Origin: Sphaerodactylus townsendi
Lineage: Eukaryota
NCBI RefSeq assembly: GCF_021028975.2
Contig: NC_059430.1
Location: 104,904,001 to 104,968,000, forward strand
Direction: 5' to 3'
DNA length: 64,000 nucleotides
This document shows, piece after piece, positions 11,301-61,420 of this stretch; the stretch's first letter is position 1; each line of letters opens with the position of its first letter. The notes beneath the pieces were generated by a model. The model saw only the letters and a list, made by a program, of their open reading frames with translations, was not told the DNA's origin and searched no databases. Made by a program: the position numbers and the translations under genes.

Positions 11301-12861
11301 ATTTCAAGCCCAGGATGGGAAGCATCATGTAACTTTGACCAAGCAAGACAATTGTTCTGACTACAAATCTGAATATTAAAAGTTCTGATTCATAATTTAG
11401 TTCAAAGGTCTGGCATCTTATCTGGCATTGTTATGGTTTCGAAAAGGGCATTCTGACTGCAAGAAGCAGAACGCGTGGTTTTCAACCTTGGGACAGAAAC
11501 CAGAACAGTTTGGAGCAAGAAGAATTAGCAAAGATGATGTATCATAGGAATTGTCAAGACGCTTGCCGTAAAATAAGGCTTCCTGTTTCCCAACTCCTGG
11601 GCTGTCCAAAGAGGTGGTTTTTAGCCCAGACACAATCTCCCTGCAGGCTTGTCAGGTAGCATGACAAATGGGTCTGTTAAAGCAGGAAGAGCACAAAAGG
11701 ACTTAAGTTCAAAGATTTATTACAGGCCAGAGCACCCAAAATAAATACTAAATTCAGGCAAAATAAAAGAACACCCTGGCCCCATTTTAGGGTGCTAGCT
11801 AACAGACCTTCTACTGCCCAAAGACAAACAAACAGGCTCTGCAGGTAAATCCACCAGCTACAGCTTTCCAACCCAAGTTTTCAGCTGTTTACAGAGCGTC
11901 CTCCACCTGCAGCAATTCACCCCTACTCCACACCCCACTGTTCAAAACTGCAGCTTTTTATCCAGACTATAGCCAATCCCATTCCTTCTGCCAGGTGTTT
12001 TATTTTACTAAGCACATTCTCTCTCTGCCTAAAGCCAAATTATTTACGACTGGCGCTTTGACGGTTACTCTACACAAATATTTTTATCTGTTTAAATTCT
12101 AACCTTCAAGAAGATATCGTCTTCCTGACAAAGACCGTCAAGAGATGTCTGTTGCACTGGACCAAAGGTCCACTTAATCCTGCTTCTAGCTGCTGACAGT
12201 AAGGTTACCAGCCTCAAGATGGGACCTGCAGTTCTCCCAAATTTCAACTGATCTCCAGACTACAGTTCTCCTTTGAGGAAATGGCACTTTTGGAGGGCAG
12301 CCTAGAATGGCATCTCATTTCTGCAGAGCTTCCTCCCACCCCAAGCTCTGTCCTTCTCAGACACCAACTCATTGACTTATGGAATTCATAATCTCAAGGT
12401 ATGGATAGGTTTGTGAGTTTAGATGGCTTTAGAAGAGGGTTAGATGGATGTGGGGATGATGGGTCCATCAACTGCTACCAGTCACGATGACTGACATATT
12501 CAGAGGCGGTATACCTCCAAATACTTGTTCCTGGAAGATGAACAACTGAGGGAGAGTTGAATGGCTGTTTCTGAGCTTCCCAGTGGTAATGGCTGGCCTC
12601 CCCTGCAGTGTTCAATTGCTTTGGGCATGATCACTTTTAACACTGTTTTCTGAGAAATCTGGTAGCCAGACTTACTGCTGTTGTAGGGGGAAGCTATCAG
12701 CAGCCTTTCCAAGTCCCAGTCTAGAATTCAGTCATCTTTCTGGCCCCACCCTTAAGGAGGATCCAACAGGAACCATTGGCTAACTGGCCTCTGCTTAACG
12801 AAGTTGCTCCTTTTTAAGGTGCCTTTGAGAACAGTGTTTCTGATCGATTAATACTGAAAGA

Positions 12862-18900: not shown

Positions 18901-21900
18901 GGGAATCACAGCTGATCAAAAGGCCTCAAGGTTGCCCAATGACTTTGCAATGTGGAAAATTAGCTTGATTAAATTTGTCTCACTGCCATTTCTGGTCAAA
19001 TGGGTCCTGCAGATTTTACCATGTAAATCTGCAGAACCTGTGAACAAAGCTGATAATGTGATAAGTGCATGTATTATGCTTCCTCAAAGCAGTTTAGAGC
19101 AGTGGATGTGCTTCTCCCTTCTATCATTTATACCCATAACAACTCTTTCAGGTAGGCTAACATGAAAAACAACGTCTGGCTAAAGATCGTCTAGTGAGCT
19201 TTATGACTAAATAGGGACCAAAGTGACTCTCGCAATCATCTTCATGTCTGACAAGTGTAGTTTCTGCAGCCTCCTTTTTGTTTCCTCCCAGGTACATTCA
19301 TTCCAAGAACCGAGCCAACCTGTCCTACAAACTGGCTGTGAATCACTTGGCTGATCGTACCGCAGAGGAGCTGGTAGTGCTGAGAGGAAGGTTAAAAACC
19401 AGGGGTCCCAGTAACAGGTGGTCTTTCCCATCAAAAGGCTATGATAACCTCAGCCTGCCAGACAGCTTGGATTGGAGGCTTTCTGGTAAGCATGTGGACA
19501 CCTCAGATCAGGAGCTCAGCTGGATCCTACATTTCTTCAACAATAAAAAAATACTGTATTGCACAAAAAAGAAAAGCTTGGGCAGGGTTCATATGTGCCA
19601 GGAAACCTGGTTGCAACAGTCGGAGAAGGTAACACATGTAGCATCATTTCAGATAGCTTGTGGAGAGTCATGGAGGGTTATCTTTTGGTACGTGTTGTTG
19701 TTATTATTATTATTTATTAAACTTGATATACCGTCCACCCCCAAAGGGCTCTGGGCGGTGTATAACAGAACAACAACTAAAACAATAGTGAACAATAAAT
19801 AATTAATAAATAATTAAAAATCATAACTCAACTCAATATAAGATAGCAGCATTCCAAACCCAATAAAAATGATACTGATGATGGCGCCTGATCCCAAGGC
19901 CAGGCAGGGACAGACAATACCGAAAAAATGTCACATTGGTAATGCCAATGATGGTACGGCACACAACACGGGGGCATCCAATCCGCGGCTGGCCTCCCCA
20001 AAAGCCAGCCAGAAACAAGCCAGTATGCACAAAGCAAAGAAAAGAATTAGCCTTTTTTCCCCTTCTGCCATGCTAATTTTCGGTTGCATTGAGTTTTTCT
20101 TTGTCTGTGTGAGGGTGAGATCCATCACTTGCAGTTTTAAAACCCCTACTCTTGTAGTTCTGCCATGGTATTCCTTTGCATGCGTACACTAAACAGGAAG
20201 GCCAGTTCACTTGGATAAAAATGTCCTGCCTGGGCAACTGATTTGGTTTAATTTGTAGAAAAGGGCAGCTGAAGCTTTTCATAGCATGGAGATAAGATGT
20301 ATCGTCTAGTAAACAATATTCCATTGAGCCATGATTAAAGGGACAGGACATTTGTCTGTTACGTTTGCATGTTAGCTTACAAATAAGATGCCTCTGGCTC
20401 TTTAACGTCCAAGTTCCTAGTTTGATACAAATATATAATTTTGCTCCTGTGATCATTTGCACAGTTGGTGAACTGCATTGCTGAATGCTTTTAAAAATTT
20501 GATTGTGACACTGGCGTGTTGACACATTTCCTTACTTCACTCTGGTCACCAATGAAGGTGCTGTGACCCCTGTCAAGGACCAGGCTGTATGTGGGTCCTG
20601 CTGGAGTTTTGCTGCCACTGGTACACTGGAGGGGGCACTCTTCCTGAAGGTGAGTGCCCAGGGGCTTGAAAGCAAAAAGAGCCATTTAGACACCAGAGCA
20701 CTTATCAGAAATTGTAGTATTACGTGTTTTCAGGGGGAGGGGTGAACATTTTCAAGCCAACTTCTTACAGGGAAGCTGGTGAACATGTTCCCTTCAGACA
20801 GCACACAGGGGACCAGTCTAGTGGTCTGTCAAATCCAGTATCCACTTTCTGTGGAAGACACATAAGTCAGAGACAGAGAGGCTAAACCTATATAGTTTGG
20901 CCTATAGTTGGTCCTATAGTTACCCCCTAGCAATTAGCATTCATAGCTACACTACCCTCAAGCATGGGGGTTCCAGTTAGTCTTTATGGCTAATCACAAG
21001 TTGCAGATGTTTTCTCTACAAACCTCTTTTAAAGCCATATTACGCAAGCAGCCAACCTGGCACACTGTAGCAGTGAGTTCCACATAAGGTTGCAAATTCT
21101 AGGTTGTGAAATTCCAGAGATATTGTGTGTGGGGGGAGTGAGGCTGGGAAGAGGAGAGGTCTTGGTATAATGTCATAGAGTTCACCTTCCAACCAGTAAT
21201 TTTCTCCAGGGTAACTGATCTCTGTAGTCTATAGATCCGTGGTGGCGAACCTTTGGCACTCCAGATGTCATGGACTACAATTCCCATCAGCCCCTGCCAG
21301 CATGGCCAATTGGCTATGCTGGCAGGGGCTGATGGGAATTGTAGTCCATAACATCTGGAGTGCCAATGGTTCGCCGTCACTGCTATAGATCAATTGAAAT
21401 GCCAAAAGTCTCCAGAGGTTGGCAACTGTTCTTCCACATTTCATTGTGCATTGTGGTGAAAAAAATTTTGGGGGATCTGAAATGATCAACTGCATTTTTC
21501 TATGTAACTTCCAAGTTAAGACAAGCACTTGTGTCCTGATGTGACATCTAGTTTGAGCCTGAGTTACAGCATTATGGATGAAAGAGAAATATGGATGTGT
21601 GCGTATACATCCATGTTAGACATAACTTTATAGAACATCCCCCACCCACAGCTCTCTTTTTTTTACACTGAAAAACCACATACCCTGGCCTATACATTTG
21701 GAAACGAGGCTCTAACCCCACTCCCAACCCCCACCCCCATGGGGGGCTACACAGTGGAATCCTTCCTTGCCAAAAATATCTCTGCACATACAAAACTAAC
21801 AAGGCAAAGAAAAGACTATAAGTTCCTGGAGTGGTCTCTATTTTTCACTCTACAAAGGAGCTTTTCACTTCCAATCCTGCCTCTATTCACACACACCCTG

Positions 21901-27469: not shown

Positions 27470-27701
27470 TCCTAACCAATCATATCCCCCACCCTGCAAA
27501 ATGGGAGCGGGGTGTTTCTTTCTTTCCTTCCTTCCGCTTGCTTTCCCGCGGTTTCAGCAAACAAGGTCACCCTTGCGAGCGAGAAAAGCCCAGGCAACTA
27601 CATTTCCCATGAGCACTTTCAACGCGTTTTTAAAAAGAGCCAATCGGAATCCACGTTACTTGACGTGGCTATAAAAGGTCAGTCGCGCTCCGCGCTCTTT
27701 C
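27470..27701 (+). promoter_or_regulatory. CpG-rich Pol II promoter: CCAAT boxes, ZNF143/SBS motif, CRE-like site, TATA box, TCT/5'TOP initiator
   Basis: CCAAT at ~27476 and ~27640; AACTACATTTCCCATGAGCAC at ~27596-27616; TGACGTGG at 27661; TATAAAAG at 27670-27677; pyrimidine initiator CTCTTTCTTTCC at 27695-27706, ~27-31 nt downstream; donor GAG|GTTAGT after 27731. Confidence 0.85.
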
Positions 27702-29408
27702 TTTCCGGTTGCTTCGTCGAGTTGTGCGGAGGTTAGTAAACAAAAGGGGGAAAAAAAGGGGGTTTTCAAATCCATCGCCATCCTTTTCTTCCCGGGGGGC
27801 TAGGGCTGTAGTGAGTGTCGATAGCCTCAACTGAGAGTCCTTATTTTGTATTTAATAATAAAATATAATCAAAAGAGGGACTGATCGGCTGACGAGGTCT
27901 AGTCGACTGGCTGGAAGGATTCTTCAGGTCCTTGTGGGTGGGGGTGGGCAGAGGAAGCGAATGTCCTTTAACCTGGTCGTTTTGGGACTCTGGAACAGCG
28001 TTGTGTTTTTTTGTTGCATTTCTCATTTTAAAACCTGGCTCTTATTTTTGTTAGTATAACCTTGAAAGAGGAAGCCAGACCGGCTGTGCTGCAGCTGTAG
28101 AAGCAGGAGGTCTTCCCAGAGGTGGGATTCGGACTGGTTGGGCAGAACTGATTCCTAATGTTTTGTTTAGTTCGCCCAACCGGTTGTTAAATGGTGTGTC
28201 CCGCCTAAACTCTAGGGGCGCCCCCGCCAATCTTGCGGGCCGCCGCGCCTCCCTCGGCTCTGCTCCTCCACTTTTTATATTATCCTTTTGCTCAACTGCC
28301 CCGCCCCCTTCGCCCAGCTCCTTCCCCCACCCTTTGCTGTATCGCTAGGATGCTTTTTGGGCAAAGAGACTGGAACTCCTGTAATACTCAGGTCAAAAGG
28401 AAAGGCTAGGTAAGGGCAGGGGCTTCACAGAGGCTTCACTTTCTCGCTGGGCATGCGCATAGGCTTGGCACGTGCTCATTTGGGTTGCATCAGGGCTCTG
28501 TGCACAGGTAGCCTTTTGGGGCAGGGAAATCTCCCAGGTGCAAGAAGTGGAAGATCCAGGAACCTTGCGCCGCCACGCCTCCAGCTCACTCCGGAGGTCT
28601 GGAAACAGCCGTGCAGAGGGAGCCCTCGCTTGCTTTCTCCAACAGGCAAGAATCTATTTGACCCAGATTGGGGGGAAAGCTCTGCATGTCTGCCCAGCAT
28701 CCCTTACTCACAAGTAATTGCTACCTGGCAAAGTGCCTCTCCTGCCAATCTTGTAGAGCTGTTGAGGAAAGCAATGAGGAAGCATATTCATAACTACCAT
28801 TTGCACATGGGGTTGTGGGTAGGAAGGCCAAAATGGAAATAAAAATCAGTTTAAATCTAAAAATTTAGGCTCATACTAATAGATGCATTTGATACTGACA
28901 TATGTTATAGGTATTTTATATTACTGTTATTTGTTTAATGGAATATATACATACATTCTTAAAGTATGGTTTGTATTTGAAGTTGAAATCCTTGGTGCAT
29001 GCTAAGCTCTACTCTAGTTAGCCATCCCCCCCCCCCCAGATCCCGATTTAGATCCCCCCAGGCCTTTTAAATATCATTATAGGGTTCCCTTATGTCTCCC
29101 TAAGGAGGAGGAAGAATGCAGTGAGGGGGGAGAGAGTTCCAAGACCTCACCCAGCAACCCATAGAGCTTTTCTGGAGGTAGCAGTTCATTCATTCCTTCA
29201 CTCATCTCCCCCCCCTCCCCCTTTACTCCATTCACACGTGAAAAAGCTTTGCCAAGGATGCTGGTCTCCATTGTGGATTGCTATTTCCTCTGCAAAGAGT
29301 GTGTAATGGCGGGGGGCGGGGGGGGGTCTGCATCAGAATCCACCAAGATATTCCATAGTGTCCAGCAGAAACAGCGCTGTCATCACTGTGTGTTTTGAGT
29401 GTCTAGTG

Positions 29409-29497
29409 CAGGGGTGTCCCACTCTGGTTAGCCATGCCAGAAGGGGCTGGTGGGAATTGTAGTCATGAACATCTGAAGCACCAGAGTTGAAACCCTG
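29409..29497. mobile_element. Small hAT MITE nested in the large hAT
   Basis: CAGGGG...ACCCTG termini. TSD GTCTAGTG (29401-29408, 29498-29505). Confidence 0.8.
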
Positions 29498-30735
29498 GTC
29501 TAGTGTTGTGGTGTGTGTGCACGCCTCCTCCCTCTTCTCCCCACCAGTGGTGTCCTGCCTTCCTCCTCCTCCCTGCACACATAGCCAGAACCAGCACAAT
29601 GCCCTTTGAAAGCCTGTTCTCCCAGCTCCCAAACCCAGTTCTTGACCAAAACATGCCCGACTCTGACAGGCAACATGCAATGGAGGAAAGGTCGAGTAAT
29701 GTTTTACGTCTCTTCGCTTCTCAATGGTGATGATTAATAGTGATAACTAAGAATGATGGTGTTATGTGGGCTGGTGATGGGAGTGATAACAATGTGTGTT
29801 AAAAATTGCCGTGTGTGTTTTTAAATAAAATGGAAAACTATTTCTGTAGCATTGTATGGGTAAAGTCACAATCAGGCTGATGGGGCAGCATTTTTAGCTA
29901 GATTGGGGGGTGATCTCTTAGAGGTTTTATTTTAGATGCATTTTTACATCTATCTTTATTTCTTGCTGAAATAACAAATCCATCTGTTTGTAACATGCGC
30001 TTTCCTTTGGGCATCTGTGTTACATCACTGTTGTTCTTATCCTCCCTGACCCCACTCCCATTTTAAATCAAAACAAATGTGTTTTACCCTTTGAATACAG
30101 AGAGCTCCTTGTGATTTTTACACCTTCCACATTTAACTGAATCTTTTTTTGTGCAGGTGAAGGTCACTCTGATATTATCTTTTCCACTTGTACATCTCAT
30201 TGAGCTAACAAGCCAGAGTCATTTTTCCTCTGGGTGGAAGACTTGTGTTTTCTCTTTCCTGCAGATAGTTGTTTTTAAGCAGATTTGTCTGAAGTGTTAT
30301 TTTAAACACCTCTAAAATTATTTACCTGTCAATAACATGTATGCAAATGTTACTCTTAGGTTTCCCGAGGCTTCGATTGTCTGAGGCCGCTGCACTGAAA
30401 GCACCAGAGCTCGGATATATTTAATCAAAAACTGTTTTTATCACGAGACAAAAGGTTTGTCGTACACATTATTCTATCGTATTTAATATGCATAGCTTAT
30501 GCCATTTATTTATTTCAGCAAGAAATTTTCATTTAATGTCGATAAAATGAAGAAAATGTATGTTCTGACTGATGTTTATCAATAGTATTAGCACAGTGCT
30601 TTGTTTATAAAAGTTTATGATATGTCCACACGTGGATAGAGCCAGTAAAAATGTTCAAATATATAAGCACATCTCTGCTGCTCTATAATATATTAAAATA
30701 GAACTATTTTTATTTTTGTAGTGTCCCTTAAAAAA

Positions 30736-32895
30736 ATGAAAAGGCAACAGAGTTGGACAGATTTTTTCAATAAGAAACCAAAATCAGATTCTGTGGTATC
30801 AGAATGGGCCTTGGATGGTTCAAGACAGGCACAAGCACAGCCACTCCAATATGGAGAAAGCAGCACGCCGGTTATTAAAATAGAAAACGATGACGACTCC
30901 AACATTGAAGATAATCTTCCTGAATGCTGGACAGTGCAACAATATAACAAGTTTAAGGAAAAATATGACGGACTGGTAATTTTAAACAAAAAGTTAGGTT
31001 GCGATTATTGTGCAAAATGTGACTGGAAAATAAGACAGAAAAGTGTTCACGTGTCAAAAGAATGGAAATATATTCAGATTGAGGCATCAGGGAGAAATAA
31101 GGGGGTGCGACAAGCTTCCCTAAGGAAAAAAATGAAAGAGCATTTCGCATCAAGAGCTCATAACATTTGTGCAGAGAACTTAAAACAACGTGAGCAGGAT
31201 TCAGTAACGGAAGCAATGCATACGATGAATGAAACATATTTAATGACCGAAGAATATTTAAGTACTTGTAGAGTATTTAATACAGTTTACAGCCTGGCAA
31301 AAAGATGTCAGCCATTTTCAGACATAGAAGATGAGATAGAAGTTCAAATTAAAAATGGATTAGATATGGGAATAGAATTACATTCCCATGAAGCTGCTGA
31401 GAAAGTAGTTGATTTCATTGCAAAGGAAACTAGAAAAGAAATATTTCATAAGATTATTGAAAATAATTTGAAAATATGTTTGGTTATTGACGAAGCTTCG
31501 GTGATATCCTGCAAACCGGTTATTGTGCTTTTCTTAAAAGTTGAGGATTCAGCTGCATCGCCAACAATTTTCGTTGAGCTGATTGAATTGGAAAGCCAAG
31601 ATGCAGAGACAATATGTTCTTCAGTTATGGAAAGTTTAAATAATGTTGGGCTTACTAAGAACTACCTAGAACAAAATTTAATAGGCTTTTGCTCCGATGG
31701 CGCCAGCGTCATGCTTGGGAGAAAATCTGGAGTGAGCACTAGGATTGCAAAAGAGTTTCCAAACATCGTAATATGGCACTGTTTAAACCACCGGCTCCCG
31801 CTTATTTTAGATGATTCGATAAAGGATATTAAGCAAGTAAATCATTTCAAAATATTTATTAGTAAGATCTATTCTACTTTTCATCAATCCAGTAAGAGCC
31901 AAATTGAACTTTCCCAAATATCTGAACAACTTGGAATTGAAATTACAAAGATTGGTAGAGTTTTGGGACCAAAATGGGCTGCCTGTAGTTTAAGGTCCAC
32001 CCTAGCTGTGTGGCAGGCTTATCCAGCACTACATCACTATTTTTCTTCAAACAAAAAGTTCTTCGGTATGGCTGCCCGTCTTGAAAATACATATTTTCTA
32101 AGTGATTTGGCATTAATGATTGATATTTTAAACGAAATTTCTCTTCTGACAAATGCATTGCAAGTGAGAAATATAGACCTAATAAAGGCTGAAAAACTTG
32201 TGATAAGATCTATTAAAGCATTTCAAATGCTTGCAAAGGAAAAGGGTCCGTATGAAAAAAAAGTTGGTGAATTAATTACTTCAGAAGCCTTCAAAAGTAT
32301 AAAATTTGTAGAAAATCATCAATTCGTCGGGCTTCCTCGGGAAAAACTGTTAGAAAACATCGTAACGAATTTGGTAAAAAGACTAATGGATTGCGAACAT
32401 CGGAATAAGTTACAATTTCTCAATTTTTTGGAGCCAGATCACTGGAATATTGAAAAAGTAGTAGTTCCATGGAAAGCAGCTGAAGAGCAATTGCTTGTGT
32501 TTAATGATATCTTTAATTACCAAATTGATATTAATGATTATCGAGATTTCGTGGAAAACGTCCTGAAAAATCAACAGAATTATGCAATTCCTGAAAATGT
32601 TCAAAGAGCTAAAAATATTGTCAGAACCATTGCTGTAAGCTCACCAGAAGTGGAAAGAGTTTTTTCAAAGATGAACATAATATGTTCAGAGACAAGAAGC
32701 CGCCTGCCTGTTTCTAACATATCAAACACAATGACGATTAGTCTACTTGGCCTGCCTCTAAAGGAATGGGATCCTACTCCTACAGTGAAAATCTGGTTAA
32801 CAATAAATCACACAGCCAGTGATGCTCAGATAAAAGCAGAGAATATTGCAAGTGGGGACGCCCATCAAGAAGCAATATGGAAATATCTCAAATAA
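30736..32895 (+). CDS. hAT transposase, KIAA1586-like, 719 aa
   Basis: Uninterrupted ORF. First ATG at 30736, after the acceptor TTTTTGTAG (ends 30721). N-terminal zinc finger (CDYC...H..SRAH); D of IDEAS (~31489); D of SDGASVM (~31696); CLNH (CxxH); E of SSPEVERVFS (~32653); C-terminal hAT dimerization region. Confidence 0.9.
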   Translation: MKRQQSWTDFFNKKPKSDSVVSEWALDGSRQAQAQPLQYGESSTPVIKIENDDDSNIEDNLPECWTVQQYNKFKEKYDGLVILNKKLGCDYCAKCDWKIRQKSVHVSKEWKYIQIEASGRNKGVRQASLRKKMKEHFASRAHNICAENLKQREQDSVTEAMHTMNETYLMTEEYLSTCRVFNTVYSLAKRCQPFSDIEDEIEVQIKNGLDMGIELHSHEAAEKVVDFIAKETRKEIFHKIIENNLKICLVIDEASVISCKPVIVLFLKVEDSAASPTIFVELIELESQDAETICSSVMESLNNVGLTKNYLEQNLIGFCSDGASVMLGRKSGVSTRIAKEFPNIVIWHCLNHRLPLILDDSIKDIKQVNHFKIFISKIYSTFHQSSKSQIELSQISEQLGIEITKIGRVLGPKWAACSLRSTLAVWQAYPALHHYFSSNKKFFGMAARLENTYFLSDLALMIDILNEISLLTNALQVRNIDLIKAEKLVIRSIKAFQMLAKEKGPYEKKVGELITSEAFKSIKFVENHQFVGLPREKLLENIVTNLVKRLMDCEHRNKLQFLNFLEPDHWNIEKVVVPWKAAEEQLLVFNDIFNYQIDINDYRDFVENVLKNQQNYAIPENVQRAKNIVRTIAVSSPEVERVFSKMNIICSETRSRLPVSNISNTMTISLLGLPLKEWDPTPTVKIWLTINHTASDAQIKAENIASGDAHQEAIWKYLK

Positions 32896-32996
32896 GTTTT
32901 TATCAGGTATTTAATATTTTTTCATTAATATTTTAAAACTCTTATAACATATTCTTGTTTTGTGTACCTCTTATTGTACTTATTTAAGTATTAACT

Positions 32997-33083
32997 CATA
33001 GGTGTCAAACTCGTGGCCCTCCAGATGTTATGGACTACCGTTCCCATTATCCCTGCCAGCATGATGCGAGTTTGACACCTATG
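32997..33083. mobile_element. Small hAT MITE (87 bp) nested in the 3' end of the large hAT
   Basis: Perfect 17-bp TIR CATAGGTGTCAAACTCG. TSD TATTAACT (32989-32996, 33084-33091). Confidence 0.88.
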
Positions 33084-35118
33084 TATTAACTGTATGAAAT
33101 AATAAACTATCTTTCGGTATATCATTTTTTTTTATATTTAAAACAGTCATTAGGGCAACAAAGCTGTTGTTAAATTATTTGAATCCCATCACTGGGTCTT
33201 CCCCCTTCGTGCAAGCATGTTGCAGCCCCACTGCCTGGTGAGGGCAGGTTTTCTTCAGGCTGTTTAGGAATCCTAGTTTAGCAGCCTAAACTTCTGAAGT
33301 CTAGTACCTTGTCACTTAAGGTTGCTGAGCTTTGAACCCTGTGCTTCTGTATGCAAGCCCAGCACATGATCTGCTCCAGAAAAGTCTACCTTTTCGTTCT
33401 TCTCTTCCTCTTCTGTGTGTGCGATTATCTTTTAAGACCTTAAAAGAATTCAGAATGAATCATTTTTGCTTTCGCTTTATCCCTTTTATGGTTGAAAGTG
33501 GAGTTTTCTATCCATAAAAATTAATATATTATAACATATTGTACCCTGTTCTTGCCCCAATAAGAGCATGAAATTGGAGGTGATCTTTGTAGCAATCTCC
33601 TATTTTTGTCAGTCTCTCTTTAGTCTCTTCCTGGTTGGCTGCATTTTTTCTGTTGCTTTGCTATGTCCAACAACGCGTTGTACTTTTATTTTTTCCCTTT
33701 CAGATTTTGAGTTTTAAGTAGTCCAGGACGCACCCTCCACACCCCTCTATTCCCACTACTTCCTCACCACCGGATCTCCTGTTCAATTTGTGGTTTCACC
33801 TTCCTTCAAGACTTCCTCCCGTCTATCCGGACCACAAAGTACTCTCTGATTTCTTAAAGGTAACGTTCAAAGTTCTCAAGTTTGTTCTGATTAAATGCTT
33901 TAATAGCAGAAGAGTTTGAAGCTTAAAGTTTTTATTTTGTACTTACATCAGTATTTCTGTTGTTTCTTCTGTTTGTTTTGCTTTCCTTGTTTCCGCTTTC
34001 CGCTATACCCCTTGGCTTTGTTTTGCTTGTTTCCGCGACAGTGCTTGTCACGCACACCTTAGGGTTGCCTCTTCAATCTGCACTGTTTTCTTTTTGCTAC
34101 CCCAATTTGGGTTTTCGCTTTGAGATATTTTTGTGCTGGTTCCAGGGCATACGGCTCCATTGGCCTCTATTCATCCACCGCACTGTGCTGCTGTCGTCCT
34201 CTGCTGTCGTCCTTTCCTGACCAGCAAGCACTCCAAGTGAATCTGCTGTGTCTTCTCTTGTTTATACAAGAGTTGACGGGTCTGAGAAAGTTCTCTGACC
34301 CTGATGCAGGCAGATGAAAGTGGATTCTTTCTCTCCTGCTCAGGAGAGATGTTGCCCGTCTTCCCCCCACACTGGAAGTCCCCCTTTGTAGCAATCTCCT
34401 CATTCTTGCTGCTGCCTGTGCTGTTTAAGCCAGTGTAGCAGAATGGTTAGTACTGGACTAAATCCCCAGCAAATATGCAGCAGGATAGAGTGGCTCAGGT
34501 AGCTTGTGGGCAGGATAGGTTGTACTTTTTCAGGCAGTGGGCAAATAGCATTTTCCCAGCCTTTTTAGATATGCTTCACTTTTCTCCCCAGTGGGCATGC
34601 AGTGTAGCTTACAGCATTGCTTTCCTCCACTACACTGTATCTTCAGAACAACAACCTTGTGAGGTGGGTTGGGTTGAGAGGCAGGCCAAGGTTCTCCAAC
34701 AAGTTTCCATGGTCAAGCAAGGATCTGAATCTGCATTTCCTGATCCTAGTCTGGCACCAAGAGCTAGACTTAAGCATTGATACGCTAATGTTGTATTTAA
34801 AGCTTTACTGCGTGGGGGAAGGGGACAATGACAAACAACCATTTTGCCTTTTCAGGGATCTACAACTTTATTCTGTTTGATGTGTAGACAGGGCTAGGGA
34901 GATTATGGTTCAGAGCTCCCTGTGTGGCTGCAGAACATGCTGGCTGAATTCATTTTTGACTTTTACACAACAATCCTGGAAGGTAGATTAAAACAAGTGC
35001 TCTGCTGGCATACATCAACAACTCTACCATCTTTTTTCCAGGAAAATGTAGATATTCAGGTCTAGACGCTTATGCAAAATAATTCCCTACTCTCAAGATC
35101 TTAATGCTGTACTTAATG

Positions 35119-35258
35119 CTGGCCCTGTCGAAGCTGCATCTGTCTCTTGTGTGGCTGATGTGGTCAAAAAGGTGCCAAAAGTAACTTTCTTCCTTGACGG
35201 TCGCTGTTCAGTTGGTCTCCAGGTAACTGTCCAGCAACATTTTTAGGGAGGCACAACT
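35119..35258 (+). ncRNA. SNORA16: H/ACA snoRNA SNORA16
   Basis: Matches recalled SNORA16 blocks TCGAAGCTGCA, TGTGGTCAAAAAGG, TTCCTTGACGGTCGC and GCAACATTTT. H box AAAGTA at 35178-35183, ACA at 35253-35255. Confidence 0.88.
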
Positions 35259-35823: not shown

Positions 35824-35954
35824 GTGCATGTTAACCAAGAGCTGTGGCTTAGCAAATAGCCACTGGGTCTCCAACAACATGCGAGAGCATGGCGGGGGGA
35901 CTTTGACTCTTCAGGCTTGGTTATCTGGGGATGTCACTCGACCCTCCTATATTG
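35824..35954 (+). ncRNA. SNORA44: H/ACA snoRNA SNORA44
   Basis: GCATGTT..CCAAG.GCTGTGGCT...ATAGCCA...TCTCCAAC..CATGC hairpin. H box AGAGCA at 35884-35889; GACTTTGAC in hairpin 2; terminal ATA box at 35949-35951. Confidence 0.87.
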
Positions 35955-37587: not shown

Positions 37588-37708
37588 ATCCCTCCCTATC
37601 CCTTTCCCATTAGATCTGAATACCGATCTGATGGTCAAAAAGGAGGGAAAGTAAAATGCAAGCTGGTCTTGACCTCTTTATGGGGAGTGAGGCTGGCTTG
37701 AAACAACT
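37588..37708 (+). ncRNA. SNORA61: H/ACA snoRNA SNORA61
   Basis: CCTCC..ATCCCTTTCCCAT..GATCTGAA...TGGTC..AAAAGGAGG hairpin. H box AAAGTA at 37648-37653, ACA at 37703-37705. Confidence 0.87.
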
Positions 37709-38887
37709 TCTCTGGACCCTGATGGATCAGCATTGCTGATAACTATCTTCACAGTTTCAGAAGACCTTTCACTGAAACCAATAAGTTGTGGGGGGAAATA
37801 GATGTTGCTACACAAATATACTTGTACCTCCTGTTTGACAAGACATTCTTTGCTCCGCTACTTCTCAAACTGCACTGAACCTCAGCTGAGTCTGAATGGC
37901 ACTACGGCTGAACCACATGAGTAGGAGCCAACATGGTGCAGTGGTTAGAGAGTTAGACTAGGGCTGGTTAAATGTAGATTTGAAACTCTGCCATAGAAGC
38001 TCTTTTGGGTGACCATGGGCCATTAACATCCCCAGTCTAACAAACTAAGTGCTGTGAAGGTAAAAAGAATCCGGGGATTTCCTCATGGAAAAGGATAAAA
38101 TGAAAATGTGGTTGGTGAGGCAGCAGTGAGAATTTCCTGTGACCTGTATGGCAAGTCTATTTCTGTAATACCAATTTCCCTAAAACTGTGCCCCCATATT
38201 AGCAATCCCATTGCGTAACTTTTCTCATGTACCCCCTAACACTCTGGCACATGCCCCAGGTTGGGAACCACTGTTTTAGAGGAACAAAATGCTAACTCCT
38301 GTGGCTCTACTCCACTCTTTGGGCATGCCCAGTTCTAACCGTTGCCTGGTATATTTTGCTCCCACCTTTCCTTGCAGTTCCTCCCTCCCCATACAGTGCT
38401 GTGAGATAGGTCCGATATAGACACAGTGAGTTGGGTATCTGAGCTCATCACTGTTTGTCTATTCGTCTTGCTATTATCACAGGCTGTTTGTGGAATCTGA
38501 CTATGATCTGGGAATCTAGAGTTCAAATCCCTGTTGTGCCATGATCTTAAAGTCAGTTGCACTCAGCCTATCCTACTTCATGGGGTTGTTGGGAGGATAT
38601 AATAGGGGGAGGAGTTTGTAAACTGCTTTGTGATCCCCATTGAGCCAAAAGATTCCTTGAGTGTTTGTTTGGTGACAAGCTTCTTTTCTCCTTTCTAGCA
38701 GAGGCCTGTTTCCCCCACTTGGACTTTATTATGTCTCAGCTGACCACTTCAGCAAAGTAAGACAAAGCTCCCAGCAATGTTTTGTTAGCTTGTCTGTGGG
38801 TTAATCTGGATTGGACAGCATGTCAACAGCTGCTCTGTCCATATTGAAAACACCTGGATGGCGTTCAGACACAAAGCCACCTCTGCC

Positions 38888-38956
38888 CTTGTCTGTGATG
38901 ACTTGTTTCTTATGGTGACTGCTGGATGAATCCTGCGGATATGGGGCTGAGACAAG
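38888..38956 (+). ncRNA. SNORD99: C/D snoRNA SNORD99
   Basis: Terminal stem CTTGTC/GACAAG; box C GTGATGA at 38895-38901; box D CTGA at 38947-38950. The guide CTGCGGATATGGG is complementary to 28S rRNA CCCAUAUCCGCAG. Confidence 0.9.
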
Positions 38957-40347
38957 GCAGTGGGTGAGGGGAGTTCCCAAAGGGGACTTTTGGCAAGGTT
39001 GCTCTTTAAAGGTTGCAAATGACATGTTGGGAAAATGGCACACGAAGCAGTATATGAAAGGTGATTGCTTGGCAGAGATTTATGAGCTCCTCAGATTACT
39101 TTGTAGGGTTTAATTTTGCAGTGCAGTTTTCCAGGTGACAGGAGAAGAATAACAGGATGGGGCAGTAATTGTTCCTTACCCATCCAGTAAGCACTGCTAG
39201 CCGACATATGATTTAAACCAGGGTTGGTGCTGTAAGAGCCCTGCTAGATAAGACCAGTGGTGCATTTAGTCCGGCATCTAGTCTGCTTCACACATTGGCC
39301 AACTGGTTCCCCTGTAGGGCAACAGTTGGAACATAAAGGCCAAGGCCGTTCCCTGAAGTTACTTCTTAGTCCTGGTATTCAGAGAATAACTGGCTCTGAA
39401 CTGGAGATCCCTTTTAGCCATCTTGACAACCATGAATCTAATTCACTTTTAAACCATCCAGTATGGTACTCTGTATCCTCTGCTTGGAAATTTGCATAGT
39501 GTTTAGCCTGGAAGTCTTTCAGAATTGACCACAATAAGCCATTAATAATTTAGACCATGGTAAATGCTGCAGGAGAATAATGTACTGTTGAGATGGTGCT
39601 TTAGTGCTGTTACATTCTGATCTATGGAGTACAGATAATGGCAAATGGTGACAAAATTAATACATGCTTGTTTTTCTCTAGGATTTCAGAGGGTCTTCAG
39701 GAGTCCGGGCTGTCCACGAAGAACCTTCAGGGGTGCTATGTACAGTTTTTACAATTGATTTTAGAGCTTATGCAAGGAATATGAAATTAAAGGATTTTCA
39801 CTGTTTTCCTGTCTGCATTGTTTATCTTGCTACCTCCAACAACACTTGAGTATAAATGTGTATATCTTAATAATATGTGTAAGCAGCTCTGAGGCTGGAA
39901 AGAACAGAGCAGTAAATTTAATACAATAAAAATAATAAATAAAAAGTCCCGTTCTCATGCAATCTGAAAATTTGATCCTAGAATATCAGCTGTCTGGCAG
40001 TAGGACTGGCTTTCTTTCTATACAAAAATCCCAACAGGCCCCTTTCTGGAGCTAAGTGGTCTCACAATTTTCTATTTTAAGAGAAATTTTAACCATCTTA
40101 CGAAGCAGACTGCTCATGGGGGAGCTTGGAATAAGGGGAATAGGTGTGTGATGTTTTGATCTGTTCTGTTAAATCCGGGGTCCGCAGCCTTTTTGAGTGT
40201 GTGGGCACCTTTGGAATTTTGACACAGGGTGGTGTGCGCCACCCCAAAATGGAAGCTGCAGGAGATGGAGTCAAATCCAGAGGAAGTCCAAGTGCAGGGG
40301 TGAAGAGGGGTAATTTTAAAAATACACTGGGAAAGTGGATGAGAGCA

Positions 40348-42692: not shown

Positions 42693-43272
42693 CAGTGGTG
42701 GGATCCAAAAATTTTAGTAACAGGTTCCCATGGTGGTGGGATTCAAACAGTGGCGTAGCGCCAATGGGGCTGGGCGGGGCACGGTGGGGGCATGGCCAGG
42801 CATTTCAGGGGCGAGGTATTAATAATTTCTGTTACTGTAAAAAACTCTTACTGTAAAAAAAAAGTTCCTAATTTCCAGCTGGTATCTTTCTGCCCATAAT
42901 TTAAACTCATTATAGCAAGTCCTATTGTCTACTGCCAACAGAAACTACTACTACTCCTCTAATTGACTGCCTGTCAAATACTTTCAAATACTTGATTTTG
43001 TTTCTAGAAATCAAAAAAAGGATACTTTCCTTAAACAAGGAACTTTACCATATTTCTGAAACATGTTTTTAAAACAGCCCAACAGGGAGAATTATCCCGT
43101 TTTCTACCTTTGCTAACCAGCTACATAGGAAACAACAGGACTTTATGATTTTTGGACCTAATGGAATTTCTAACGGAAAAGCAGACCCAATTAGTAACCC
43201 CCTCTCGGCACGCACAAATAATTAGTAACCCACTCTCGGGAACTGGTGAGAACCTACTGGATCCCACCTCTG
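42693..43272. mobile_element. Non-autonomous hAT (580 bp) with TIRs like the large element's
   Basis: TIRs CAGTGGTGGGATCC / GGATCCCACCTCTG. Perfect TSD GGGCTGGC (42685-42692, 43273-43280). Confidence 0.88.
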
Positions 43273-58500: not shown

Positions 58501-61420
58501 AAATAACTGGACATGTACAAATCTCATCAGGAGGAATTCTTCCAATTCTGGATGCTGAATTTCAAGATGGGTGTAGACAAATCAGAAAGGGTTTGGAGGA
58601 AGCCAGGAAAGGACTGAAAACATCCTCTGCGGAGACATTGTTGGGGATGTTTAGCTAGAACAGGGGTAGGGAACCTTTAACACTCAAAGAGCCATTTGGA
58701 CCCGTTTTCCACGGGAAAAGAAAACACTTGGAGCCACAAATAATTTTTGACATTTAAAATAAAGATAACGCTATATATATTGCGGGGGTTTTCTACCTTT
58801 TACTCCGCTCATTCTGAGAAGCGCATGGATGCGTCCACCCTGCTGCCTGCAGGGCGGGCAAGGATGGGGCCAGCGGCTCAGCCTTGCCGGCCGCCGGGAA
58901 AGCGCCCACCCCGCTCCAACAGGGCGGGTGAGAGGGGAAGCCCGTGGCACGGCCCAGCCAACCGCAGGCAGTTGGTGCGCCTGCCCTGCTGCCTGCAGGG
59001 CGGGCAAGGATGGGGCCGGTGGCTCTGCTCATGGAGCCGCAGTGCAAGGGCAGAAGAGCCGCATGCGGCTCTCGAGCCGCAGGTTCCCTACCCTTGAGCT
59101 AGAAGATGAGAAGATTGAGGAGACATGATTACCCTCATCAAATAGCTGAAGGGCTTTCCCAGGGAAGAGGACAAAAATGTGTTCTCTGATGCCGTGGACA
59201 GCAAAATGAGATTCAGTGGGTATTCAGTTACAGGAGGGAAGATTTTGGTTGAACATCAAGAGAAAATTCATAATCGTACAAGTAGTTTAACCATGGAACC
59301 AGTTACCTTGGGAGACGTGTTAGGTTCTCCCTCACTGGAGATCTTCAGGCAGAGGCTGGACAGTCATCTGTGGAGATTTTCTGGCTATTGATTCCCCCAT
59401 CCCACCCCACCCCCACACTTGAGGGAGGGAGGGAATTAGATGGCCCCTTCCAGCTCCAGGTTCTCTGGAATCATTTTTTTTAAAAAAATTTATTTTTCCA
59501 TATATAAAAGAAAGGAATAATACAGAAAAAAAGGGAAGGGGAAAGGGGGGGATACAATTGGAACAATAAGAGAATCTGGGTTAATAGCTTCTTTCACTGA
59601 AAAAACCTCAGTTACATTCAAAATAAAAAAGAAGCTCAATACATGTTGAACAACTTCTACATATACTCTTGCAAATAATTCATTTAGAATTATTTGTGAT
59701 CATCTATATATAATAAAAAGTTATATATATTAAGGCGCGCCTCTGATGGAGGTGGGGTGTGTGGCAGCAGCAGGCCCGGGGTGCTCCTGGCCTGGTGCCG
59801 GCTGCTGCCATGCTGCTGCCCGCCCCCCCAATCAGAGGCACATGCCTGCTCCCGGCCTCTGATAGAGGTGGGGTGGTGGCAGCAGCCGGCCCTGGTCTGG
59901 AGCCTGCCGGGCTCTCCTGGCCTGGCGTCGGCAGCTGCCGGGCCGCTCTCCCACCTCTATCAGTGACTGTGCCTGCTCTGGGAGGGGCAGGAACCGTTGT
60001 GATGCTTACACAGGGGACTACCTTTACTTTTGTCTAAAAAAGAAAATAAAGTGGATTTTGTGGTCAGAGTGCCAGACCCAAGTCTGAATCCTCACTCTGC
60101 CATGGAAGCTTATTGGGCGACCTTGGGTCAGTCATTCTCTGCTATGAGCATAAAATAGAGGAGATAAAAATAATGTAGAGTCCACTTTGGTTCCTCACTG
60201 GGGAGAAAGGCAGGGTATAAATGAAGCAACTGAACAGAGAAAAACAAAACATATTTTAAACTGCTGTGAACTCACTATAAAGCAAAGCAAAAAATAACCG
60301 ATATGGCACAGTAGACAAGAGAGCTGAAATTAGATTGGGGAGTAGGGCAGAGTTCAAATCCCCACTCAGCCGTGATGTTGGCCAGTCAGGTGACTTTGGA
60401 CTGGTCGGCTTAACCTACCTCCGGAGGCTCCTGCAAAGATAAATAAACAGGCAGAACTACATATGCTTAGGGTTGGTTTCCAGGAGACAAGGGTCACCAG
60501 GTGGGGACACAAACCCAACCTATGAACTCTGTCAGTTAAACATTACTGGCACGTTCTCTGTTTTTACCCACATTGCTTCCATTCTAATTTGGATGATGGC
60601 CTCATAAAGAAGGAGTTGCAGCCTTTCCCCCCTAAGAGGAAACGCTCCAGGGAAGTAATTATTTGGCCCTTTGTGAATGACTCGGGGACATAGAAATCAA
60701 CCCTTTATCTAGCGCAGGGGTCTGCAACCTGCGGCTCTCCAGATGTTCATGGACTACAATTCCTATCAGCCCCTGCCTACAATTCCCAGGGACTACAATT
60801 CCCAATTGACCATGCTGGCAGGGGCTGATGGGATTTGTAGTCCATGAACATCTGGAGAGCCACAGGTTGCAGACCCCTGATCTAGCCCCTTGAAGAAATA
60901 GCAGCATAAAAAATGAATGCAGGATGGCTACTTTTATGAAGCAGACTCAACTGAGAACAGAAATCCTTAACCAGGTGTTCCTTTCTTGTGATACAGATCT
61001 GTGACTCGCTCATATTACCGCAACTCAGCAGGTGCAGTTCTGATGTTTGACTTGACCAATCGAGCATCTTTTGAGAGCATCAAGAAGTGGCACCAGGAAG
61101 TTATGGAGACCGTCAAGCCTTATCATGTGGTCTTTGTGCTGGTTGGCCATAAAAGTGACCTGAAGGATGAATGTAAGGTTGAGCAAAAAGAGGCTGAGAA
61201 GCTGGCATCTTCACTGGGAGCAAAGTACATAGAAACATCCGCTAAGACCAGCCAGAACGTGGAGGAGGCTTTTCAGATATTGACCTTAGCCATCTATGAA
61301 GCACTGGAAAGTGGGAAGATGAGACCAAATGAACAATGGGATGGAATAAAATGTAAGTTACCACCTGAGGCACAGCTTAAGATACAGGAAGAGAGGAGAC
61401 AGAAGAAATGCTCATGCTAG
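55581..61420 (+). CDS. RAB39/RAB42-family GTPase (Rab-39B-like, rab42b-like); exons 55581-55801 and 60997-61420, 214 aa
   Basis: MAADSIWHYQFRIIMLGDSTVGKS, QTVGVDF, WDTAGQERFR|SVTRSYYRN, GHKSD, ETSAK and C-terminal CSC. Same phase-2 intron position as RAB42. Confidence 0.9.
58661..59096. mobile_element. Non-autonomous hAT-Charlie element inserted in a CR1 fragment (~58540-59460)
   Basis: TIR CAGGGGTAGGGAACCT / AGGTTCCCTACCCTTG. Perfect TSD AGCTAGAA (58653-58660, 59097-59104). CpG-rich interior. Confidence 0.88.
60715..60879. mobile_element. Palindromic hAT MITE
   Basis: TIR CAGGGGTCTGCAACCTG; TSD ATCTAGCG/ATCTAGCC. Same internal ACTACAATTCC core as 21237-21382. Confidence 0.85.

What the first reader, a model, noticed from the sequence alone, without database searches (positions are those of the whole stretch)
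27697..33202. Exon-trap hAT transposase captured by a 5'TOP snoRNA host gene (SNHG12): a candidate lncRNA-to-coding conversion
Seen: a complete hAT element (TIRs, TSD GGTCTTCC) sits in sense orientation 385 bp after the exon-1 donor (27731) and upstream of all four snoRNAs. Its 719-aa ORF follows an acceptor (TTTTTATTTTTGTAG, ends 30721) with the ATG 15 nt later (A at -3), and AATAAA lies at 33101. Neither host exon 1 nor a candidate internal exon (30360-30454) contains an ATG, so the transposase ATG would be first in a spliced mRNA. Known: SNHG genes are strong, ubiquitous, non-coding TCT/5'TOP transcription units, and CSB-PGBD3 shows a DNA transposon acting as an alternative terminal exon. 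Inference: one promoter may yield either a transposase mRNA ending inside the element or the read-through transcript that releases four rRNA-modification snoRNAs, making the two outputs compete.
Basis: partly seen in the sequence, partly recalled or inferred. Interest (0 to 1): 0.9.

Follow-up and report, generated by a model that had tools for sequence, protein, structure and literature searches.

The report
Transposase exon spliced into gecko SNHG12
A single intact cut-and-paste (hAT) transposon sits in the first intron of a gecko snoRNA host gene, and RNA contigs show its whole transposase reading frame spliced as an exon that joins the host's next exon; this is transposase capture by a non-coding gene, but the link to the host's own start and any translation are unproven.

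Summary
A 5,078-bp hAT element (28117-33194) has an 8-bp target duplication and an intact 719-aa KIAA1586-like transposase ORF. It lies in sense in intron 1 of a host gene carrying SNORA16, SNORA44, SNORA61 and SNORD99.

One public run behaves as RNA. It confirms the predicted junction 30454|30722 and the leader exon 30360-30454.

It also corrects the model in two ways:
- The ORF segment is an internal cassette exon (30722-32906). A donor 11 nt after the stop joins it to host exon 2 (33704). At least one isoform therefore carries the transposase ORF and still runs into the snoRNA-bearing part, so the two outputs need not compete.
- The only upstream junction seen is a GC-AG splice from an exon ending at 28645, not from host exon 1. 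Exon 1 is 35 nt, and contigs built from 31-letter words cannot show it.

The acceptor before the ATG is a family trait. Colubroid snakes use the same site to fuse SCAN-KRAB exons to this transposase.

The copy is single in this genome, shows no sign of decay, and belongs to a patchily distributed family.

Verdict: a new variant of transposase capture. Host-promoter drive, translation and poly(A) use are untested.

The scan had already noted this same stretch twice (s1-760010, s1-760022).

The parts
27672..27680 (+). TATA-like box (TATAAAAGG) of the host promoter, inside a CpG-rich stretch (27500-27900, CpG o/e about 1)
   Evidence: Sequence; CpG profile. The TSS was not measured.
27697..27731 (+). 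Predicted host exon 1: oligopyrimidine start, no ATG, donor GAG|GTTAGT
   Evidence: Not seen in RNA contigs, and not seeable there (35 nt against 31-letter words).
27898..28645 (+). Transcribed upstream segment or exon 'Ea'. It starts in host intron 1, runs through the element's 5' end, and ends at the GC donor CAG|GCAAGA. It contains five ATGs.
   Evidence: X4 record 25 and joint 28645|30360 (cut +2 gives GC..AG).
28109..28116 (.). Left copy of the 8-bp target-site duplication GGTCTTCC
28117..33194 (+). hAT element, 5,078 bp. The 14-nt terminal inverted repeats are at 28117-28130 and 33181-33194.
   Evidence: Ends are homologous to those of snake and other copies.
28646..30359 (+). Intron (GC-AG, 1,714 nt) inside the element. 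It holds a very high-copy repeat at about 29260-29660.
   Evidence: tables 2 and 5.
30360..30454 (+). 95-nt leader exon 'Eb', no ATG, donor AAG|GTTTGT
   Evidence: records 25 and 28.
30455..30721 (+). Intron (GT-AG, 267 nt). The unspliced form has depth 2.4 against 351 for the spliced form.
   Evidence: joint 30454|30722; record 27.
30722..32906 (+). 2,185-nt cassette exon carrying the whole transposase ORF. The acceptor is family-conserved. The donor CAG|GTATTT lies 11 nt after the stop.
   Evidence: X4 depth 247-601. The loose end behind 32906 equals window 33704-33729, which is unique in the window.
30736..32895 (+). ORF of 719 aa plus stop: KIAA1586-like (FAM200/ZBED5-type) hAT transposase. 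The invariant residues D252, D321, E640, W347 and C349/H352 are kept.
32907..33703 (+). Intron from the element's donor to the host exon 2 acceptor. It contains the nested MITE (about 32996-33083), AATAAA at 33101, the 3' TIR and the right target duplication.
33195..33202 (.). Right copy of the target-site duplication GGTCTTCC
33704..33860 (+). Host exon 2: strong acceptor, no ATG, predicted donor AAG|GTAACG
   Evidence: The start is shown by the RNA junction. The end is read from the sequence only.
35117..35258 (+). SNORA16
   Evidence: 99.6 bits.
35824..35954 (+). SNORA44
   Evidence: 74 bits.
37589..37708 (+). SNORA61
   Evidence: 75.3 bits.
38887..38958 (+). SNORD99
   Evidence: 65.2 bits.

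Best explanation
A lone, structurally intact KIAA1586-like hAT transposon landed in sense orientation in intron 1 of the gecko SNHG12-type snoRNA host gene.

The family carries a 3' splice site just before its ATG. Squamate copies also carry a 5' splice site just after the stop, so the ORF behaves as a ready-made cassette exon.

Shown: in RNA the 2,185-nt ORF segment is spliced to a 95-nt leader exon upstream and to host exon 2 downstream. A mature chimeric RNA therefore carries the transposase ORF and continues into the snoRNA-bearing part of the host gene.

Inferred:
- Most of this RNA starts at the host promoter (exon 1 to 30360). That would make the transposase ATG the first ATG behind an oligopyrimidine leader.
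- The stop lies upstream of further exon junctions, so the RNA should be sensitive to nonsense-mediated decay, like other snoRNA-host transcripts.
- The outcome is host-driven expression of a probably active transposase. This is an early, still neutral or parasitic stage of transposase capture, not a proven new host gene.
For: - Splice junctions: (run X4) gives joints 28645|30360 (GC-AG) and 30454|30722 (GT-AG). A contig running past 32906 continues with 26 letters equal to 33704-33729, which are unique in the window.
- Depth: 247-601 on the ORF exon against 0-3 in the introns.
- Depth argument for another 5' source: the upstream exon Ea has depth 54 or less, against 351 at the Eb-ORF junction. 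Most ORF RNA therefore enters by another 5' route.
- No upstream ATG: neither exon 1 nor Eb has one. Exon 2 also has none.
- Acceptor conserved: a polypyrimidine-AG lies 7-22 nt before the ATG in copies from Pantherophis, Thamnophis, Lerista and an unrelated Logan contig.
- Acceptor used for capture elsewhere: snake gene models splice a KRAB exon into that same site (...VALNR-MKRRQ...).
- Donor conserved: it is present after the stop in both snakes.
- ORF intact: all family-invariant residues are kept. Only 3 conservative private changes fall at otherwise invariant columns.
- Single copy: DNA word depth over the ORF equals the flanks (X1-X3). No same-species paralogue appears among the 120 listed hits.
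- Literature: Cosby et al. [quoted passage not shown]
Against: - No junction from host exon 1 was seen. The only upstream exon found (27898-28645) has five ATGs, and its start lies in the host intron, not at the predicted TSS.
- All RNA evidence is contigs of one run, which is not on record as RNA. Contigs show neither transcript starts, ends, strand nor isoform shares.
- A TSS inside or just before the 95-nt leader exon would explain the depth step equally well.
- Use of the poly(A) signal at 33101 could not be assessed, because a very high-copy MITE swamps that stretch.
- There is no evidence of translation.
Confidence: 0.55

Rival explanations
1. The transposase RNA is made mainly from a promoter inside the element, either near 28.2-28.3 kb or just upstream of or within the leader exon at 30360. 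The splice to host exon 2 is a by-product: the element's own 3' end is weak or disrupted by the nested MITE, so its conserved donor finds the next strong acceptor. The host promoter contributes little.
For: - In compact relatives the promoter and a short leader with a mini-intron lie right before the ORF. Eb plus the 267-nt intron could be their gecko counterpart.
- The region around Eb keeps its CpGs (o/e 1.12).
- An octamer-like ATGCAAAT sits at 30342-30349.
- A GC-rich stretch with CCAAT-like and TATA-like motifs lies at 28210-28285.
- The one upstream exon seen ends inside the element.
Against: - Eb's 5' edge is used as a true acceptor (junction 28645|30360), so RNA does enter it from upstream.
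- The contig carrying Ea extends 219 nt beyond the element into host intron 1.
- Host transcription must read through the element to make the four snoRNAs. It therefore presents the exon 1 donor to these working acceptors.
Confidence: 0.3
2. One reading: the element acts as an alternative terminal exon, polyadenylated after AATAAA at 33101. Transposase mRNA and snoRNA-releasing read-through are then mutually exclusive, competing outputs of one promoter.
For: - AATAAA at 33101 is the only signal between the stop and the 3' end.
- CSB-PGBD3 and similar captures work this way (cited).
- RNA depth falls to 12.7 beyond 33166, against about 600 on the ORF exon.
Against: - A contig joins 32906 directly to host exon 2, so a non-terminated isoform exists.
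- The fall in depth is equally explained by splicing at 32906.
- The stretch 32907-33120 cannot be read, because of the nested MITE (word depth in the tens of thousands to about a million).
Confidence: 0.15
3. The copy is already a domesticated host gene kept by selection for a cellular function. It is single-copy, intact and well expressed.
For: - It is single-copy.
- The ORF is intact, with only 3 conservative private changes at invariant columns.
- RNA depth is high.
- The same family was domesticated repeatedly, for example mammalian KIAA1586 and the snake and marsupial KRAB fusions.
Against: - No orthologue in any other gecko or lizard appears among the 120 listed hits; the best is 75% identity, in snakes and frogs.
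- The termini and target duplication are still intact, and the catalytic residues are kept. That equally fits a young active element.
- Pairwise omega of 0.3-0.4 to foreign copies says nothing about selection after insertion.
- Two linked non-synonymous variants segregate in one individual.
Confidence: 0.1
4. Artefact: the junctions are assembly chimeras, or X4 is not RNA.
For: - The run is not on record as RNA.
- Each junction rests on one contig.
Against: - All three junctions fall exactly on GT-AG or GC-AG boundaries. Two of them were predicted beforehand from sequence alone.
- Depth is about 100-fold higher on exons than on introns.
- The DNA runs X1-X3 show none of these joints.
Confidence: 0.03

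Closest known systems
Host-transposase fusion genes born by transposase capture (Cosby et al., 10.1101/2020.05.07.082677), e.g. KRABINER
   Same: - A DNA transposon sits in sense in a host intron.
[quoted passage not shown]
- The chimeric transcript can in principle coexist with the host transcript.
   Different: - The host here is a non-coding snoRNA host gene, so no fusion protein can form and the full transposase would be made on its own.
- The ORF is an internal cassette exon joined onward to host exons.
- No conservation across species is shown.
Colubroid snake SCAN-KRAB-KIAA1586-like genes (P0002 Pantherophis, P0007 Erythrolamprus, P0005 Micrurus)
   Same: - Same transposon family: 75% aa and 82% nt identity.
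- The very same acceptor position before the ATG is used.
   Different: - The snake hosts are coding, and the five leader codons are read in frame to give a fusion protein.
- The snake models end at the transposase stop.
CSB-PGBD3 (piggyBac element as alternative 3' terminal exon of ERCC6; own knowledge, also cited)
   Same: An intronic transposon with an acceptor before its ORF is spliced to upstream host exons under the host promoter.
   Different: - In CSB-PGBD3 the element terminates the transcript and yields a fusion protein.
- Here a donor after the stop returns splicing to the host gene. Termination inside the element is unproven.
snoRNA host genes: TCT/5'TOP or dual-initiation promoters, NMD-sensitive spliced RNA (PMC4233243, PMC6954239)
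   Same: - snoRNAs lie in introns.
- The first exon is short and has no ATG.
- The start is oligopyrimidine behind a TATA box.
- The spliced RNA has an early stop upstream of several junctions.
   Different: The spliced RNA here carries a 719-aa conserved ORF in place of only short accidental ORFs.

Membership tests
hAT superfamily DNA transposon | 8-bp target-site duplication | tested here: met
   GGTCTTCC on both sides, 8/8.
hAT superfamily DNA transposon | Short terminal inverted repeats of hAT type, shared with relatives | tested here: met
   14 nt, 12/14 complementary. The motif is enriched in the window. The ends are homologous to those of the snake copy and of L004.
hAT superfamily DNA transposon | Transposase with an RNase-H-like DDE core and a C-terminal hAT dimerisation domain | tested here: inconclusive
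   The ORF's own Pfam hit to Dimer_Tnp_hAT is below cut-off (13.9 against 21.4 bits, residues 621-666). The relative P0019 passes (24.8 bits), and relatives carry PF27073 and PF14291. D252, D321 and E640 are invariant in 15 members. No solved relative was found by sequence.
hAT superfamily DNA transposon | Mobility: several copies, or an empty site | tested here: not met
   The full-length copy is single at 95% or more identity. No empty-site contig was seen. Only the termini are multi-copy, and one related MITE lies at 42693-43272.
SNHG12-type snoRNA host gene | SNORA16, SNORA44, SNORA61 and SNORD99 in introns of one transcription unit, same strand | tested here: met
   Four Rfam matches above the gathering score, all on the + strand. 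Exon 2's start is confirmed in RNA. The later exons were not mapped.
SNHG12-type snoRNA host gene | TCT/5'TOP transcription start | not testable with these tools
   A TATA box at 27672 and a pyrimidine run at 27697 onward fit this feature. No 5'-end data are available.
Host-transposase capture (Cosby et al.) | Transposon-borne acceptor just upstream of the ORF, used in RNA | tested here: met
   Junction 30454|30722. The site is conserved in five copies and used in snake fusions.
Host-transposase capture (Cosby et al.) | Upstream host exon spliced to the transposase exon | tested here: inconclusive
   No junction from 27731 appears in the contigs, and a 35-nt first exon cannot appear in them. 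A link to the downstream host exon 2 is shown instead.
Host-transposase capture (Cosby et al.) | In-frame fusion of a host domain to a transposase domain | tested here: not met
   Host exons 1 and 2 and the leader exon have no ATG. The stop precedes the donor.
Host-transposase capture (Cosby et al.) | Kept under purifying selection in two or more species | not tested
   No orthologous locus from another gecko was within reach. The closest proteins are 75% identical and come from snakes and frogs.
CSB-PGBD3-type alternative terminal exon | Transcript ends at a poly(A) site inside the element | tested here: inconclusive
   AATAAA is present at 33101. The isoform actually seen splices out at 32906 to host exon 2. 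The 3' stretch is unreadable because of a nested MITE.

The most novel reading that the evidence does not exclude
The squamate branch of this hAT family is built as a self-contained cassette exon, with an acceptor before the ATG and a donor after the stop. A sense insertion in any intron then borrows the host promoter without killing the host transcript. Here that puts an active transposase behind the growth-regulated 5'TOP leader of a ubiquitous snoRNA host gene. Transposase supply, and the mobilisation of related MITEs, would then be coupled to ribosome-biogenesis demand. A non-coding host RNA would also become a coding one.
Probability: 0.18. Interest if true: 0.8.

Novelty: new variant of a known kind. 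Interest (0 to 1): 0.55.

Why it matters
Transposase capture is known as a route to new fusion proteins in coding genes. Three things would be new here if the 5' link holds.

- The trap is sprung in a non-coding, housekeeping snoRNA host gene.
- The whole transposase is used as an internal exon, which leaves the host's snoRNA output intact.
- The copy looks enzymatically intact.

That would give a natural system for three questions. How does a transposon obtain ubiquitous expression at little cost to its host? How does nonsense-mediated decay limit it? How might a long non-coding RNA become coding?

It also shows that both splice sites flanking the ORF are inherited family features. This may explain why the family has been captured repeatedly: KRAB and SCAN-KRAB fusions in snakes and marsupials, and KIAA1586 in mammals.

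Tried and rejected
- Pfam on the ORF: no family at E <= 0.01. Only a sub-threshold hAT dimerisation hit appears at E <= 10.
- PDB sequence search: nothing relevant.
- Paper search for KIAA1586 + hAT + transposase: no paper.
- The ZNF451 paper (PMC4495291) concerns a DIRS1-derived LAP2alpha exon, not this transposase. It was dropped as support.
- The sigma-70 promoter scan does not apply to a eukaryotic promoter and is ignored.
- Aligning the gecko 5' leader to the snake leaders: only the first ~60 nt are convincingly homologous. The native promoter and leader could not be located this way.
- The frog locus and the Logan locus of P0016 returned no DNA.
- No run on record as RNA was offered. RNA status of X4 is my inference from its depth profile and its junctions.
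- The exon 1 junction, the TSS, the poly(A) end and isoform shares cannot be read from contigs.
- Vertical inheritance of the ORF from the gecko-snake ancestor is rejected. dS is 0.32 for gecko-Pantherophis, 0.56 for Pantherophis-Lerista and 0.68 for gecko-Lerista. That order contradicts the species tree, and frog copies are 75-77% identical.
- Polymorphism inside the ORF (2 synonymous, 2 non-synonymous) is too sparse to test selection.
- Exons were handled one by one, by reference.


Full report
**What is there**

The window comes from assembly GCA_021028975.2, record CM037619.2. Earlier notes of this scan call it a dwarf-gecko genome.

- Host gene. Four snoRNAs lie on the + strand: SNORA16 (35117-35258), SNORA44 (35824-35954), SNORA61 (37589-37708) and SNORD99 (38887-38958). 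All score above Rfam's gathering scores. This is the SNHG12 set.
- Host promoter. Upstream lies a CpG-rich stretch (27500-27900, CpG o/e about 1). It has TATAAAAGG at 27672, a pyrimidine run from 27697, and a donor GAG|GTTAGT at 27731|27732.
- Element. It occupies 28117-33194 (5,078 bp) and is flanked by a perfect 8-bp duplication, GGTCTTCC.
- Termini. Its 14-nt ends are 12/14 complementary. The terminal pattern occurs four times in the window against 0.14 expected. The other pair bounds a 580-bp MITE at 42693-43272 with its own 8-bp duplication, GGGCTGGC.
- ORF. The 719-aa ORF runs 30736-32895.

**What the ORF is**

It is a KIAA1586-like hAT transposase.

- Closest proteins. The best full-length hits are 70-75% identical and come from snakes, the agamid Pogona and two Australian frogs. 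More distant relatives occur in mammals, marsupials, arthropods, Hydra and a tunicate.
- Domains. Relatives carry PF27073 (FAM200-ZBED5 RNase-like), PF14291 and PF05699. The gecko protein itself gives only a sub-threshold hAT dimerisation hit at residues 621-666.
- Conserved residues. In a 15-member alignment the gecko protein keeps every invariant residue. These include D252, D321, E640, W347 and C349/H352, the positions expected for the DDE triad and the CxxH motif.
- State of decay. Only three private changes fall at otherwise invariant columns, and all are conservative. The copy does not look decayed.
- Evolutionary spread. dS is 0.32 for gecko-Pantherophis, 0.56 for Pantherophis-Lerista and 0.68 for gecko-Lerista, with omega 0.3-0.4. 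That order contradicts the squamate tree (geckos outside skinks plus snakes; own knowledge). Together with the frog copies, it points to a patchily, probably horizontally, spread family.

**Copy number**

In three DNA runs the word depth over the ORF equals that of the flanks, so the full-length copy is single at 95% or more identity. No joint skipping the whole element (an empty site) was listed in those runs.

Only three parts are multi-copy:
- the last ~30 nt of the element;
- a nested MITE at about 32996-33083;
- a repeat at about 29260-29660.

None of the 120 listed protein hits is named as coming from the window's own species.

**RNA evidence**

No run on record as RNA was offered. Run X4 (215 million letters, a different sample of the same study) nevertheless behaves as RNA.

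- Depth is 247-601 on 30722-32906.
- Depth is 0-3 in 28660-30260, 2.4 in 30460-30659 and 2.8 in 27660-27859.
- X4 alone shows splice-like joints; the DNA runs X1-X3 show none of them.

Three junctions are seen:
- 30454|30722 (GT-AG, depth 351).
- 28645|30360. The tool's ambiguity of 3 allows only one sensible cut, a GC-AG intron with donor CAG|GCAAGA. The contig carrying it runs back to 27898, which is 219 nt before the element.
- A contig that runs past 32906 with 26 letters identical to 33704-33729, a string unique in the window. This is a donor CAG|GTATTT, 11 nt after the stop, joined to the strong acceptor of host exon 2.

Exon 2 (33704-33860 by sequence) has no ATG.

**Consequences for the model**

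The transposase segment is an internal cassette exon of a chimeric RNA that continues into the host gene. It is not necessarily a terminal exon. Transposase RNA and the snoRNA-releasing transcript can be one molecule, so the proposed competition is not required.

The stop codon lies upstream of at least two exon junctions. The RNA should therefore be a substrate for nonsense-mediated decay, like many snoRNA-host transcripts (PMC4233243). This is inference.

Use of AATAAA at 33101 cannot be judged. The MITE between the donor and that signal has word depths in the tens of thousands to about a million.

**The unresolved 5' end**

Contigs built from 31-letter words cannot show a 35-nt first exon, and the tool itself warns that contigs show no starts. 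My inference is that such a dead-end branch is trimmed during assembly. The absence of a 27731 junction is therefore not evidence against it.

Two facts bear on the question.
- The upstream exon ending at 28645 has depth 54 or less, while the leader-ORF junction has 351. Most ORF RNA therefore enters by another route.
- The leader exon's 5' edge is a working acceptor. Host transcription must cross the element to reach the snoRNAs, which presents the exon 1 donor to that acceptor.

This favours exon 1-to-30360 splicing. A start site in or just before the leader exon would fit the depths equally well. An octamer-like motif lies at 30342-30349, and CpG is retained there.

If the RNA starts at exon 1, the transposase ATG is the first ATG. 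If it starts at about 27898, five ATGs precede it.

**A family trait**

A polypyrimidine-AG lies 7-22 nt before the ATG in every copy examined: Pantherophis, Thamnophis, Lerista and a compact 2.9-kb element on a Logan contig.

In Pantherophis and Erythrolamprus the annotated proteins read KRAB exon, then five leader codons, then MKR.... Those gene models splice into this same site.

The donor after the stop is conserved in the two snakes but absent from the compact Logan copy.

This matches Cosby et al. They found a transposon-borne acceptor immediately upstream of the ORF in 8 of 9 captures. The gecko case adds the flanking donor.

**Comparison and verdict**

The gecko locus meets the first steps of transposase capture: a sense intronic insertion, and a transposon acceptor used in RNA.

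It fails the defining outcome of an in-frame fusion protein, because the host is non-coding. Conservation across species is untested.

It differs from CSB-PGBD3 in returning to host exons. I file it as a new variant of a known kind.

Dual-initiation promoters of snoRNA host genes (PMC6954239) are a known way of separating host RNA from snoRNA output. They should be kept in mind when 5' ends are mapped.

**Limits**

- All RNA evidence is contigs of one run.
- No TSS, poly(A), isoform-share or translation data were available.
- The quotas for finding runs and for laying reads were each one call.
- Exons were treated singly, by reference.

Noticed in passing
window 42693-43272: A 580-bp non-autonomous element with the same terminal motif (CAGTGGTGGGATCC ... 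inverted) and a perfect 8-bp duplication, GGGCTGGC. It is a possible substrate of this transposase family.
   Followed up: partly
window 32996-33083: A nested palindromic MITE (23-nt arms, 91% complementary) in the element's 3' untranslated part. Word depth reaches about a million in the DNA runs and is also very high in X4. Homology to the snake copies stops exactly at its left edge.
   Followed up: partly
window 29260-29660: A very high-copy repeat (word depth 10,000-40,000 in DNA runs) inside the 1.7-kb intron of the element. Related pieces lie at about 21250-21365 and 60737-60863 of the window.
   Followed up: no
window 28570-28645: An X4 contig matches from 28570 onward but carries 255 unrelated letters before it. 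There is no AG at that point. Another transcript may share this piece, or the piece may have been captured from elsewhere.
   Followed up: no
window about 27898: RNA depth steps from about 3 to about 45 in host intron 1, 219 nt before the element and about 200 nt after the predicted TSS. This could be an alternative start of the CpG-island promoter or a contig break.
   Followed up: no
L005:8171 (Lerista edwardsae): Homology to the gecko copy ends exactly at the position equivalent to the donor after the stop. It is followed by unrelated GC-rich sequence with a GT donor about 55 nt on. This may be another splice-mediated rearrangement or capture.
   Followed up: no
L002:3-131 (Thamnophis sirtalis): An inverted partial duplicate of the first 43 codons of the transposase lies directly upstream of the full ORF.
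   Followed up: no
L003:8023-8072 and 12761-12811 (Pantherophis guttatus): Two 50-nt copies of the family's 3'-terminal sequence, in inverted orientation, bracket the transposase part of the SCAN-KRAB fusion gene. A second 5'-type terminus lies at 9765. The structure is composite.
   Followed up: partly
window 31915 and 31937: Two linked heterozygous variants in DNA run X3 change the protein (Q394K, I401T). The two differences in the RNA run (30888, 31224) are synonymous.
   Followed up: partly
window up to about 24099 (L001:1-3364): A called gene with Inhibitor_I29 and Peptidase_C1 (cathepsin-like) lies upstream on the + strand.
   Followed up: no
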